From contig NW_021826036.1 of the NCBI RefSeq assembly GCF_006345805.1, positions 1 through 13,958 of the forward strand: DNA of 13,958 nucleotides. Reading direction: 5' to 3'. The DNA is from Octopus sinensis (lineage: Eukaryota). Position 1 is the first letter of the stretch, and each line of letters begins with the position of its first letter. The notes below the pieces were generated by a model. That model had not been told where the DNA came from and ran no database searches. It saw nothing but the letters and a program-made list of their open reading frames with translations. A program made the position numbers and the translations under genes. Below are positions 4,936 to 9,460 of the stretch, in pieces.

Positions 4936-5220
4936 TTCTTTCATTCTTTCATTTGTTTTTAAGTCATTCGACTGCGGCCACGCTGGAGCACCACCTTAAA
5001 TGGTTCTAGTCGAGCAGATCGACCCAGGACTCATTCTTTTGTAAGCCTAGTACCTTATTCTATCGATCTCTTTTGCCGAACTGCTAAGTTACGGGGTCGT
5101 AAACACACCAGCATCGGTTGTCAAGCGATGGTGGGGGCACAAACACAGACACAAAGACAAACACACACACACACAAGAACACACACACAAACATACACAC
5201 ATACATACATACACACATAT
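4936..5220 (-). mobile_element. SINE family A, 3' half
   Basis: gtcattcgactgcggccacgctggagcaccacc...cttttgccgaactgctaagttacgggg...catcggttgtcaagcgatg, running into (CA)n. Reverse complement of the 380-575 body. Confidence 0.85.
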
Positions 5221-5474
5221 ATATGTATATGTCTGAGTGTGTGTGTGTCTTTGTGTCCCCCCCCCTACTACACCGTTTGTCACCCGGTGTTTATATTTTT
5301 AAGTCAGTATAACTTAGCGGTTCGGCAAAAGAGAACCGATAGAATAAATACCCGGCTTAAAAAGAAAAAAATAAGTCCTGGGGTCGATTTGTTTGACTAA
5401 ACATTCTTCAAGGCGGTGCTCCAGCATGGCCTCAATGTAACCACTGAAACAAGTACAGGAAAGATAAAAGATAA
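5221..5474 (+). mobile_element. SINE family A, 3' half, inverted relative to 4936-5220
   Basis: (TG)n, then taacttagcggttcggcaaaagagaaccgatagaata...gtcctggggtcgattt...ggcggtgctccagcatggcc...actgaaacaag and an aaagat-repeat tail. Confidence 0.85.
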
Positions 5475-6257: not shown

Positions 6258-6311
6258 TACATACACATGTATGTATACATATACATATATATATATATTA
6301 TATATATATAT

Positions 6312-6348
<37 letters not shown>

Positions 6349-6430
6349 ATAATAAATAAATAAAAATATATATATATATAGATATATAATAAAAAATATA
6401 TATATAATATATATATATATACATATATAA
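6258..6430. repeat. (TA)n-rich microsatellite abutting the palindrome
   Basis: Direct reading. Confidence 0.95.
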
Positions 6431-6520
6431 AATATTATTAGAGACAAAACCACTATTTTGCAAAACAAACAAGGAAAGAGTAATCAATACATAAAATTTT
6501 AATAAATAGTCAAAAAACCG

Positions 6521-6563
6521 CCACTACAATTGTTTCTTGTCTTGATCGACAATCTTCAGGTGG
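6521..6563 (-). ncRNA. Minimal type I hammerhead ribozyme motif with palindromic stem III
   Basis: CCAC-CUGAAGA-UUGUC-GAUCAA-GACAA-GAAA-CAAUUG-UA^GUGG. Stem I CCAC/GUGG, intact core, 5-bp stem II, stem III ACAAUUGU self-complementary, GUA cleavage triplet (cut between 6525 and 6524). Confidence 0.75.
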
Positions 6564-6619
6564 ACTTCCCATAAGTCAGTTTCAAATTATTCATAATTTG
6601 AAACTGACTTATTGGAAGT

Positions 6620-6663
6620 CCACCTGAAGATTGTCGATCAAGACAAGAAACAATGTGTAGTGG
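6620..6663 (+). ncRNA. Minimal type I hammerhead ribozyme motif, second copy
   Basis: CCAC-CUGAAGA-UUGUC-GAUCAA-GACAA-GAAA-CAAUGUG-UA^GUGG (cut between 6659 and 6660). One extra G breaks the stem III palindrome. Confidence 0.7.
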
Positions 6664-6837
6664 CGGTTTTTTTTGACTATTTATTAAAATTTTATGTATT
6701 GATTAAGTCTTCCTTGTTTGTTTTGCAAAATAGTGGTTTTGTCTCTAATAATTTTTAAATATTTACTAAAAAATTGATTTAATCCTAAATCTGATTTTTT
6801 CCCTGTAAATTTGGATTTATTCCTAATATTTATTATG

Positions 6838-6838
<1 letters not shown>

Positions 6839-9368: not shown

Positions 9369-9460
9369 TAGAATAAGTCCTGTAGTCGATTTCTTCGACT
9401 AAAACCGCTGAAGGCGATGCCATAGCATGGTCGCTGTCCAATGAGTGAAACCAGGTAACA
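9369..9460 (+). mobile_element. SINE family A, diverged tail fragment
   Basis: tagaataagtcctgtagtcgatttcttcgactaaa...gaaggcgatgccatagcatggtcgctgtccaatgagtgaaacc. Confidence 0.7.

What the first reader, a model, noticed from the sequence alone, without database searches (positions are those of the whole stretch)
6521..6663. Two divergent minimal hammerhead ribozymes, one on each strand
Seen: both strands carry CCAC-CUGAAGA-[UUGUC GAUCAA GACAA]-GAAA-[stem III]-UA^GUGG, with the complete conserved core, a GUA cleavage triplet and correct type I topology. The minus copy has a perfectly self-complementary stem III (ACAAUUGU); the plus copy has a 1-nt insertion there. Established: minimal type I hammerheads with palindromic stem III mark Penelope-like pseudo-LTRs and animal retrozymes, and cleave best as dimers. 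Inference: this is an ORF-less ribozyme-bearing mobile unit. Caveats: pair 10.1-11.1 is U-A instead of the usual purine-pyrimidine, and stem I is only 4 bp.
Basis: partly seen in the sequence, partly recalled or inferred. Interest (0 to 1): 0.85.

Follow-up and report, generated by a model that had tools for sequence, protein, structure and literature searches.

The report
Head-to-head Penelope-type insertion with hammerheads
The two "ribozymes" are one minimal hammerhead motif present in both arms of a mirror-image insertion left in a TA microsatellite by a high-copy, non-coding retroelement of the Penelope type. This arrangement is already described, and the motif looks selected, but cutting is untested.

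Summary
A complete type I hammerhead-like motif lies on the + strand at 6620-6663 and on the - strand at 6521-6563.

The two copies are not independent. They are the two arms of a 327-bp near-perfect palindrome (6430-6756), which has an 82-bp tail on one side only (6757-6838) and (TA)n on both flanks.

The genome, noted as octopus by earlier scan entries, holds at least 1,061 copies. These copies show:
- variable 5' truncation;
- head-to-head arms;
- a one-sided tail;
- spliced and intron-retaining forms;
- chimeras.

Together these are the published signature of insertion by Penelope-like element (PLE) machinery. They do not fit a DNA-transposon MITE.

Evidence that the motif is probably a genuine PLE-type minimal hammerhead:
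- My descriptor gave 0 hits in 46 Mb of random sequence.
- The predicted lowest-energy dimer is a double hammerhead.
- A diverged subfamily (375 hits) differs only at N7, in loop II, and by a compensatory swap at pair 10.1-11.1.

Evidence against:
- No Rfam hammerhead model matches it.
- Pair 10.1-11.1 is not G-C.
- Copies rarely end at the predicted cut site.
- An A13U variant was still copied.

Verdict: a new member of a known kind. Catalysis is unproven. The scan reached the same reading earlier on other DNA of this genome.

The parts
6270..6429 (.). (TA)n-rich microsatellite on the left flank; the insertion target
   Evidence: Nearly all aligned copies abut (TA)n here.
6430..6590 (-). Inverted arm: an antisense copy of the element RNA from its 5' leader to the inner reverse-transcription start. 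It lacks the tail.
   Evidence: Inverted repeats I4 and I20; alignment of 22 copies.
6521..6563 (-). Hammerhead-like motif, identical to the family consensus (stem III ACAAUUGU). The predicted cut lies between 6525 and 6524.
   Evidence: Descriptor hit; alignment A1.
6591..6592 (.). Centre of the palindrome, where the two copies join head to head. Its length varies from copy to copy.
   Evidence: I20, 2 nt between the arms; centre indels.
6593..6610 (+). 5' leader (exon 1 remnant). The splice junction lies between 6610 and 6611.
   Evidence: The leader is followed by GT at 266 genomic places. The unspliced long form ends in TTTTAG immediately before ATTGGAAG.
6593..6756 (+). Sense arm of the insertion
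6620..6663 (+). Hammerhead-like motif with a private 1-nt insertion (G at 6655) in stem III. The predicted cut lies between 6659 and 6660.
   Evidence: table 4: the base at 6655 is left out by all contigs spanning it.
6667..6674 (+). T8 run just 3' of the motif. Many 5'-truncated copies end here or a few bases further 3'.
   Evidence: 23 arm ends fall at unit positions 76-88, inside or just 3' of this run (unit 77-83), in 60 random copies.
6757..6838 (+). One-sided tail, present only at the right end. It is more decayed here than in the consensus.
   Evidence: The tail concept comes from PMC8557442 and PMC11167929.
6839..6912 (.). (TA)n microsatellite on the right flank

Best explanation
Window 6430-6838 is an inert copy of a high-copy, non-coding retroelement mobilised by Penelope-like (RT plus GIY-YIG endonuclease) machinery.

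Proposed mechanism:
1. A master copy is transcribed from a start about 20 nt upstream of a 5' splice site.
2. An intron of about 1.8 kb is either removed, giving the short form seen in this window, or retained, giving a long form.
3. The 3' module of the RNA starts exactly at the splice acceptor, 9 nt before helix I of the hammerhead. It is used as template at a (TA)n target.
4. Both DNA strands prime reverse transcription, at two different internal start sites.
5. The two cDNAs run to the RNA 5' end and are joined head to head.

The product is a palindrome with a variable centre and a tail on one side. That is why the same hammerhead appears once on each strand.

The motif itself is a PLE-type minimal type I hammerhead. 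It is kept by selection in the master lineages. If it cleaves, it most likely does so only as a dimer through its self-complementary helix III.

Cleavage is not needed for copying, because most copies keep the sequence 5' of the predicted cut.

Shown here: the architecture, the copy number, the spliced and unspliced forms, and the pattern of differences between subfamilies. Inferred: the identity of the enzyme, the two-strand priming, and catalysis.
For: Architecture:
- The palindrome, the one-sided tail and the (TA)n flanks recur in 22 aligned copies, with indels concentrated at the centre.
- The 29-nt arm/tail junction occurs 1,061 times in the genome.
- In 60 copies taken in listed order along contig C1, sense-arm homology starts at unit positions 1-9 in 15 copies. 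It starts at 21-27 in 22, of which 16 run into a shared long-form upstream sequence. It starts at 76-103 in 18 and at 121-150 in 4.
- Variants occur with tails at both ends, as solo arms and as local tandems.
- L026 is a 1.27-kb palindrome in which other sequence, including an Rfam-passing hammerhead, is fused to the same 3' module in both arms at the same nucleotide. One single-stranded template copied twice explains this.
- Symmetric variants appear in both arms of a copy: L004/L008, and A13U in L007/L015.

Splicing:
- The long form ends in TTTTAG immediately before ATTGGAAG.
- Leader plus GT occurs 266 times, against 0 for the control pattern. It lies about 1.97 kb upstream of the arm/tail junction in L084, L101, L105, L115, L117 and L126.

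Literature match:
- Inverted 5'-truncated copies, the tail and the (TA)n preference (PMC8557442).
- Both strands cleaved and extended, two RT start sites that define the tail, and a hammerhead about 90 nt upstream of them that is not needed for insertion (PMC11167929).
- Pairs of minimal hammerheads on opposite strands, a 4-5 bp helix I, a palindromic helix III, and an intron ending at helix I in D. virilis (PMC4209133).

Motif:
- 0 descriptor hits in 46 Mb of random sequence.
- The same genome has Rfam-passing hammerheads with the same layout.
- The lowest-energy dimer of A and of B is the double hammerhead, with an 8-bp intermolecular helix III.
- Subfamily B has 375 hits. Over 62 nt it differs from A at 8 of 26 free positions. 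It differs at only 2 of 36 constrained positions, and those two are the compensatory U-A to A-U swap at 10.1-11.1.
Against: - No Rfam hammerhead family matches, even at E<=10 on 85 bases.
- The whole-genome Hammerhead_1 search did not list this family.
- Pair 10.1-11.1 is U-A or A-U, not the G-C that is highly conserved in PLE minimal hammerheads. The usual extra base before 10.1 is also absent (PMC4209133).
- Helix I is 4 bp, with no evident loop-loop contact.
- As a monomer the hammerhead fold is not the lowest-energy structure. The same holds for the canonical ones.
- Within the main family, the core is no better conserved than loop II.
- An A13U core variant was copied into both arms of two loci.
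- None of the 60 sampled copies ends at the predicted cut. The ends cluster 6-18 nt 3' of it. Only 9 loci genome-wide have centres within 8 nt of it.
- The covariation rests on a single pair between two subfamilies.
Confidence: 0.72

Rival explanations
1. The insertion is of the Penelope type as described, but the hammerhead-like motif does not cleave. It is conserved as an RNA structure for another reason, for example as a protein-binding or RNA-dimerisation element, or it is a relic of a hammerhead whose catalysis has been lost.
For: - No Rfam match.
- The 10.1-11.1 pair is not G-C, and helix I is short.
- A13U copies were still mobilised.
- Copies do not end at the predicted cut site.
- PLE minimal hammerheads cleave poorly in vitro (PMC4209133).
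- Hammerhead mutants do not affect insertion by the anole PLE (PMC11167929).
Against: - All 11 invariant core nucleotides are intact in both subfamilies, although about 30% of free positions differ.
- A merely structural element would not need CUGA.GA and GAAA to stay unchanged.
- The predicted dimer is an exact double hammerhead.
Confidence: 0.22
2. The element is a DNA-transposon MITE or foldback element that targets TA, and the hammerhead match is a coincidence.
For: - A long perfect inverted repeat, TA-rich flanks, no ORF and a high copy number.
- Only one covarying base pair.
Against: - The tail is one-sided.
- 5' truncation points vary.
- Solo arms and chimeras exist.
- Spliced and intron-retaining forms share one junction nucleotide.
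- Variants are shared symmetrically by both arms of a copy.
- The descriptor gave 0 hits in 46 Mb of random sequence.
Confidence: 0.03
3. The palindrome is a hairpin RNA gene, such as a microRNA or siRNA precursor.
For: Sub-threshold Rfam matches to several microRNA precursor models, and a very stable hairpin.
Against: - All these matches are far below their gathering scores and hit both strands. That is expected for any long hairpin.
- More than 1,000 dispersed copies exist, with variable arm lengths.
Confidence: 0.03

Closest known systems
Minimal hammerheads of Penelope-like elements (Cervera and de la Pena 2014, PMC4209133)
   Same: - Type I topology and a complete core.
- A 4-bp helix I.
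- A short self-complementary helix III, which implies action as a dimer.
- Pairs about 100 bp apart on opposite strands, in truncated PLE insertions.
- An intron that ends next to helix I, as in D. virilis Penelope.
   Different: - Pair 10.1-11.1 is U-A (subfamily A) or A-U (subfamily B) instead of the highly conserved G-C.
- There is no extra base between positions 9 and 10.1.
- Helix II is 5 bp.
- No RT/GIY-YIG ORF has been linked to the family.
PLE insertion architecture (Craig et al. 2021, PMC8557442; Frangieh et al. 2024, PMC11167929)
   Same: - An inverted 5'-truncated copy joined head to head.
- A tail at one end.
- A (TA)n target.
- Non-autonomous derivatives that share the 3' end.
- A hammerhead about 100 nt upstream of the inner RT start, compared with about 90 nt in the anole element.
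   Different: - The tail is about 80 bp rather than 30-40 bp.
- The element is non-coding.
- The most common form derives from a spliced RNA.
Animal (non-LTR) retrozymes
   Same: Small non-autonomous elements carrying type I hammerheads with a weak helix III, thought to derive from PLE pseudo-LTRs (bioRxiv 10.64898/2026.07.22.740005).
   Different: - Retrozymes are direct tandem repeats whose hammerheads release unit-length RNAs that become circular.
- This copy has one hammerhead per strand, in inverted orientation, so it cannot release a unit.
- The local tandems I inspected (L068, L069) lack the motif.
Rfam Hammerhead_1 (RF00163) members in the same genome
   Same: The same layout: CUGAAGA, a 5-bp stem II, GAAAC, and an 8-nt (quasi-)palindromic helix III. 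Some of these also have only a 4-bp helix I.
   Different: - Those score 34-48 bits and have G10.1-C11.1.
- This motif gets no reportable score.

Membership tests
Hammerhead ribozyme (type I) | Conserved core: C3 U4 G5 A6 N7 G8 A9, G12 A13 A14, the A15.1-U16.1 pair, and H17 not G | tested here: met
   All are present in both arms and in subfamily B. The cleavage triplet is GUA.
Hammerhead ribozyme (type I) | Three helices around the core, with the open ends in helix I | tested here: met
   Helix I is 4 bp, helix II is 5 bp plus a 6-nt loop, and helix III is 2 bp as a monomer or 8 bp as a dimer. 100% of cells are paired in alignment A1. The lowest-energy dimer is a double hammerhead.
Hammerhead ribozyme (type I) | Match to the curated covariance model (Rfam RF00163 and related families) | tested here: not met
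   No hammerhead match at the gathering threshold. None at E<=10 on 401 bases or on about 85 bases either.
Hammerhead ribozyme (type I) | Covariation in the helices and invariance of the core across diverged relatives | tested here: inconclusive
   Between subfamilies A and B there is one compensatory pair (10.1-11.1). There is no disruptive change in 36 constrained positions, against 8 changes in 26 free positions. Only two lineages are compared. Within family A there is no signal.
Hammerhead ribozyme (type I) | Site-specific self-cleavage | not testable with these tools
   All the public runs were contigs and show no RNA ends. Truncated genomic copies do not pile up at the predicted site.
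PLE minimal hammerhead (Cervera and de la Pena 2014) | Typical features: G10.1-C11.1, an extra base before 10.1, and palindromic 15.2-16.2 and loop 3 | tested here: inconclusive
   The palindromic helix III is met (ACAAUUGU). G10.1-C11.1 and the extra base are not met. The paper lists these as recurrent features, not as requirements (PMC4209133).
Penelope-like element insertion (non-autonomous) | An inverted 5'-truncated copy joined head to head, a one-sided tail, and a microsatellite target | tested here: met
   compared with PMC8557442 and PMC11167929.
Penelope-like element insertion (non-autonomous) | RNA intermediate | tested here: met
   Spliced and intron-retaining forms share the same junction nucleotide. 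5' truncation is also seen.
Penelope-like element insertion (non-autonomous) | 3' end shared with an autonomous element that encodes RT plus GIY-YIG | not tested
   There is no such ORF in the window.
Animal retrozyme | Direct tandem repeats with one hammerhead per unit on the same strand, able to release circular RNA | tested here: not met
   In this window the two motifs are inverted. The tandem loci inspected lack the motif. Same-strand pairs of subfamily B 406-456 bp apart exist but were not examined.

The most novel reading that the evidence does not exclude
The self-complementary helix III may act mainly as an RNA dimerisation module rather than to cut RNA. It would pair two template RNAs with two-fold symmetry inside a dimeric Penelope RT-endonuclease. 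Each DNA strand of the (TA)n target would then prime on one RNA, and the two cDNAs would meet head to head. Under this reading the hammerhead dimer is the cause of the palindromic insertions, and weak or absent cleavage is expected. A related reading is that the splice acceptor placed 9 nt before helix I makes the 3' module an exon trap, which produces palindromic retrocopies of host 5' exons.
Probability: 0.1. Interest if true: 0.7.

Novelty: new member of a known kind. Interest (0 to 1): 0.3.

Why it matters
- The finding gives a clean, high-copy example outside the species in which PLE hammerheads were described. It shows how Penelope-type machinery shapes a genome rich in TA microsatellites: more than 1,000 palindromes that look like MITEs or microRNA hairpins but are retro-insertions.
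- The spliced and unspliced pair proves an RNA intermediate without needing an ORF.
- The motif extends the tolerated 10.1-11.1 pairs of natural hammerhead candidates to U-A and A-U.
- It also shows that Rfam models miss such variants, which matters for ribozyme censuses.
- None of this changes the known picture of PLE hammerheads.

Tried and rejected
- **Rfam**: searched at the gathering threshold and at E<=10 on 401-, 85- and 86-base stretches. No hammerhead match, only sub-threshold microRNA models that respond to any hairpin.
- **Early objection dropped**: I first argued that the perfect hairpin would out-compete the ribozyme fold. The palindrome is made at the DNA level from a single-arm RNA, so the objection does not apply.
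- **Monomer folding as a test**: rejected as uninformative, because the Rfam-passing hammerheads of this genome also fail to fold as monomers.
- **Core conservation within family A**: uninformative, at about 0.5-0.8% divergence per site.
- **Junctions at the cut site**: only 9 loci genome-wide lie within 8 nt of it, and there is no pile-up in 60 random copies.
- **DNA search with the AT-rich tail**: returned nothing because of word masking.
- **Extending the long form toward an ORF**: I did not try to get flanks another way.
- **Third subfamily**: a search requiring G or C at position 10.1 found only mutated family A copies, a random hit and one single-copy motif.
- **RNA evidence**: all 21 runs are assembled contigs of about 60 nt over this repeat. 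They show presence in four organism labels but no transcript ends.
- **Pfam on the ten window ORFs searched**: nothing above the cut-offs.

Full report
**1. What is in the sequence**

The + strand at 6620-6663 and the - strand at 6563-6521 each read as follows:
- CCAC, then CUGAAGA;
- a 5-bp stem II (UUGUC/GACAA) closed by the loop GAUCAA;
- GAA, then a short stem III;
- U, A, and then GUGG.

My own descriptor recovers exactly these two sites in the window. It requires the full core, a helix I of at least 4 bp, a helix II of at least 4 bp, a helix III of at least 2 bp, and H17 not G.

The extra G at 6655 in the + copy is private to this locus. It is absent from the 21 other genomic copies aligned. 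It is also left out by every laid contig spanning that place in four public runs (table 4). The family's stem III is therefore the self-complementary ACAAUUGU.

**2. The two motifs are one motif copied twice**

The region 6430-6756 is a 327-bp near-perfect palindrome. It consists of pair I4 (arms 6430-6517 and 6669-6756, 94% complementary) and pair I20 (arms 6529-6590 and 6593-6654, 98% complementary). As one strand it would fold at -233 kcal/mol.

That hairpin is why Rfam returns only sub-threshold microRNA-precursor matches on both strands.

An 82-bp stretch (6757-6838) belongs to the repeat at the right end only. Both ends abut (TA)n.

**3. It is a retro-insertion of the Penelope type, not a MITE**

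The window's own genome is 2.72 Gb in 13,516 contigs, and earlier scan notes call it an octopus.

Copy number and truncation:
- The first-look search gave 1,653 candidates for the palindrome. The best are 94-98% identical.
- The 29-nt arm/tail junction occurs 1,061 times exactly.
- I took 60 junction hits in listed order along contig C1 and mapped them to a 250-nt sense unit. The table shows where sense-arm homology starts.

| Start of homology (unit position) | Copies |
|---|---|
| 1-9 | 15 |
| 14 | 1 |
| 21-27 | 22 |
| 76-103 | 18 |
| 121-150 | 4 |

- Many copies have an inverted partner arm with its own end point.
- Some copies have no partner arm, some have tails at both ends, and some are locally duplicated.
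- The centre of the palindrome differs in length from copy to copy.
- Variants such as the A-to-G change in stem III (L004, L008) and A13U (L007, L015) occur in both arms of the same copy.

Locus L026 is decisive for a single-stranded template. It is a 1.27-kb palindrome, and each arm carries:
- unrelated sequence;
- a roughly 200-nt repeat with an Rfam-passing hammerhead (36.4 bits);
- then the same 3' module as in the window, joined at the same nucleotide in both arms.

These features match published descriptions of Penelope-like elements (PLEs):
- heavy 5' truncation;
- an inverted truncated copy joined head to head;
- a tail at one end only;
- a preference for (TA)n;
- non-autonomous derivatives that share the 3' end (PMC8557442).

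The anole PLE protein cleaves and extends both DNA strands. It starts reverse transcription at two internal sites, and the spacing between them is the tail (PMC11167929). In that element the hammerhead cut site lies about 85-92 nt upstream of the start sites. Here it lies 97 nt upstream of the inner one.

**4. Proof of an RNA intermediate: spliced and unspliced forms**

- In 16 of the 60 sampled copies, the sequence upstream of unit position 23 is a shared AT-rich stretch. It ends in a pyrimidine run and AG, directly before ATTGGAAG.
- In the short form (this window), the same nucleotide is preceded by a 22-nt leader.
- I predicted that the leader should be followed by GT in unspliced copies. 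The 21-mer made of leader plus GT occurs 266 times, against 0 for the reversed control.
- It lies 1,972-1,986 nt upstream of the arm/tail junction in long-form loci L084, L101, L105, L115, L117 and L126 (coordinates).
- The short form is therefore the spliced version of the long form.
- In L026 a foreign sequence is joined at exactly the same acceptor nucleotide.
- The acceptor lies 9 nt before helix I. This recalls D. virilis Penelope, where the intron ends at helix I (PMC4209133).

**5. Is the hammerhead real?**

*For:*
- The descriptor gave no hit in 46 Mb of order-2 Markov sequence. In 508 kb of real sequence it hit only this family and the canonical hammerheads.
- The genome holds Rfam-passing type I hammerheads with the same layout, some with a helix I of only 4 bp.
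- Two copies of the motif cofold into an exact double hammerhead as the lowest-energy structure. Helix III becomes an 8-bp intermolecular duplex, at -22.0 kcal/mol against twice -6.5 for the monomers. The canonical motif behaves the same way.
- The strongest evidence came from a loose end in a contig of another organism label, which revealed a second subfamily. Subfamily B gives 375 hits within 3 mismatches, mostly as head-to-head pairs.
- B has CUGACGA, stem II AUGUC/GACAU and loop AUUGAA, with otherwise the same helices.
- B's 9 nt upstream differ from A at 3 positions. Its 10 nt downstream differ at 1 position. Farther flanks differ by more than 3 mismatches.
- Over 62 aligned nucleotides, 8 of 26 unconstrained positions differ. 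Only 2 of 36 constrained positions differ, and those two are the compensatory swap of 10.1-11.1 from U-A to A-U.
- Fisher's exact test gives p=0.013 overall and p=0.004 within the motif. At that neutral rate, the chance of no disruptive change is about 3e-6.
- The pair count shows 100% pairing, with one pair changed on both sides.

*Against:*
- No Rfam hammerhead model gives any match, even at E<=10 on about 85 bases.
- The 10.1-11.1 pair is not G-C, which is highly conserved in PLE minimal hammerheads (PMC4209133).
- Within family A, core, stems and loop are all equally near-invariant, at 0.3-0.6% substitutions per site once the polymorphic 15.3 site is set aside.
- A13U copies were mobilised.
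- Truncated copies do not end at the predicted cut. 23 arm ends fall at unit positions 76-88, one falls inside the motif, and none at 71-75. Only 9 loci genome-wide have centres within 8 nt of the site.
- Uncleaved RNA is therefore the usual template, as reported for the anole element (PMC11167929).

My estimates:
- about 0.8 that the motif is under selection as a hammerhead-shaped RNA;
- about 0.6 that it cleaves at all, most likely weakly and as a dimer.

**6. Comparison with what is known, and verdict**

Cervera and de la Pena (PMC4209133) described pairs of minimal hammerheads 100-700 bp apart on opposite strands in truncated PLEs. They also described the 4-5 bp helix I, the palindromic helix III, dimer-dependent activity and low activity in vitro.

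The present case is a new family of that kind. It differs in its unusual 10.1-11.1 pair, its lack of an ORF and its spliced leader.

It is not a retrozyme in the strict sense, because this copy has no same-strand tandem hammerheads.

Earlier notes of this scan reached the same head-to-head PLE reading on other DNA of this genome. I read them only after reaching mine.

**7. Limits**

- No autonomous partner was identified.
- The long form was seen only about 320 nt upstream of the acceptor, plus the position of its donor.
- The covariation rests on two lineages.
- The public runs were contigs only.
- Catalysis is untested.
- The tools never named the organism. "Octopus" comes from earlier scan notes.

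Noticed in passing
L028/L029 (G000:C16:25146363-25146839, - strand): Two Rfam-passing Hammerhead_1 motifs (34.3 bits each) lie 431 bp apart on the same strand. This is a direct tandem arrangement of the retrozyme or pseudo-LTR type.
   Followed up: no
L026:1438-1640: A roughly 200-nt repeat unit carrying the canonical hammerhead has at least 993 first-look candidates in the genome, at 82-88% identity. It is a separate and older hammerhead-bearing family.
   Followed up: partly
L026:636-1906, and a 100% identical (over the part matched) copy at G000:C12:50403703-50404617: A 1.27-kb palindromic chimera. Other sequence plus a canonical hammerhead unit is fused to this family's 3' module exactly at the splice-acceptor nucleotide. 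The module seems able to capture upstream exons.
   Followed up: partly
G000:C1:151012666, 151013674 and 151014691 (also C1:64850486/64851489 and C2:13508093/13509116): The leader-plus-GT 21-mer recurs at steps of about 1.0 kb further upstream of long-form copies, without accompanying 3' modules. The structure of the 5' part of the long form is unexplained.
   Followed up: no
Unit positions 76-88 (window 6665-6677 equivalent): 5'-truncated arms end in a tight cluster in or just after the T run, 6-18 nt 3' of the predicted cut, and almost never inside the motif. This could reflect a reverse-transcriptase stop at a folded domain, or trimmed ends of cleaved RNA.
   Followed up: partly
G000:C16:33412067-33412101 (- strand): A single-copy hammerhead-like motif: CUGAUGA, a perfect 5-bp stem II with G10.1-C11.1, then GAAAC and AAUUGUA. 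Its helix I differs from this family's.
   Followed up: partly
Subfamily B, 10 nt after GUGG: Subfamily B has TTTATTT where family A has a T7-8 run. The run is therefore not conserved.
   Followed up: no
window:9853-10506: A tandem array with a 109-bp period (listed as overlapping 218-nt stretches). The inner copies are 91-100% identical (family D4).
   Followed up: no
window:514-558, 5410-5454 and 9411-9455; window:379-497 against 5055-5173: Three copies of a roughly 45-nt segment (76-84% identical), and a 119-nt inverted repeat 4.5 kb apart (84% complementary). These probably belong to another dispersed repeat (families D17 and I2).
   Followed up: no
window:8137-8546: A long CAC/CAT-type trinucleotide tract with strong GC skew. 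The ORF across it has only sub-threshold, low-complexity Pfam matches.
   Followed up: partly
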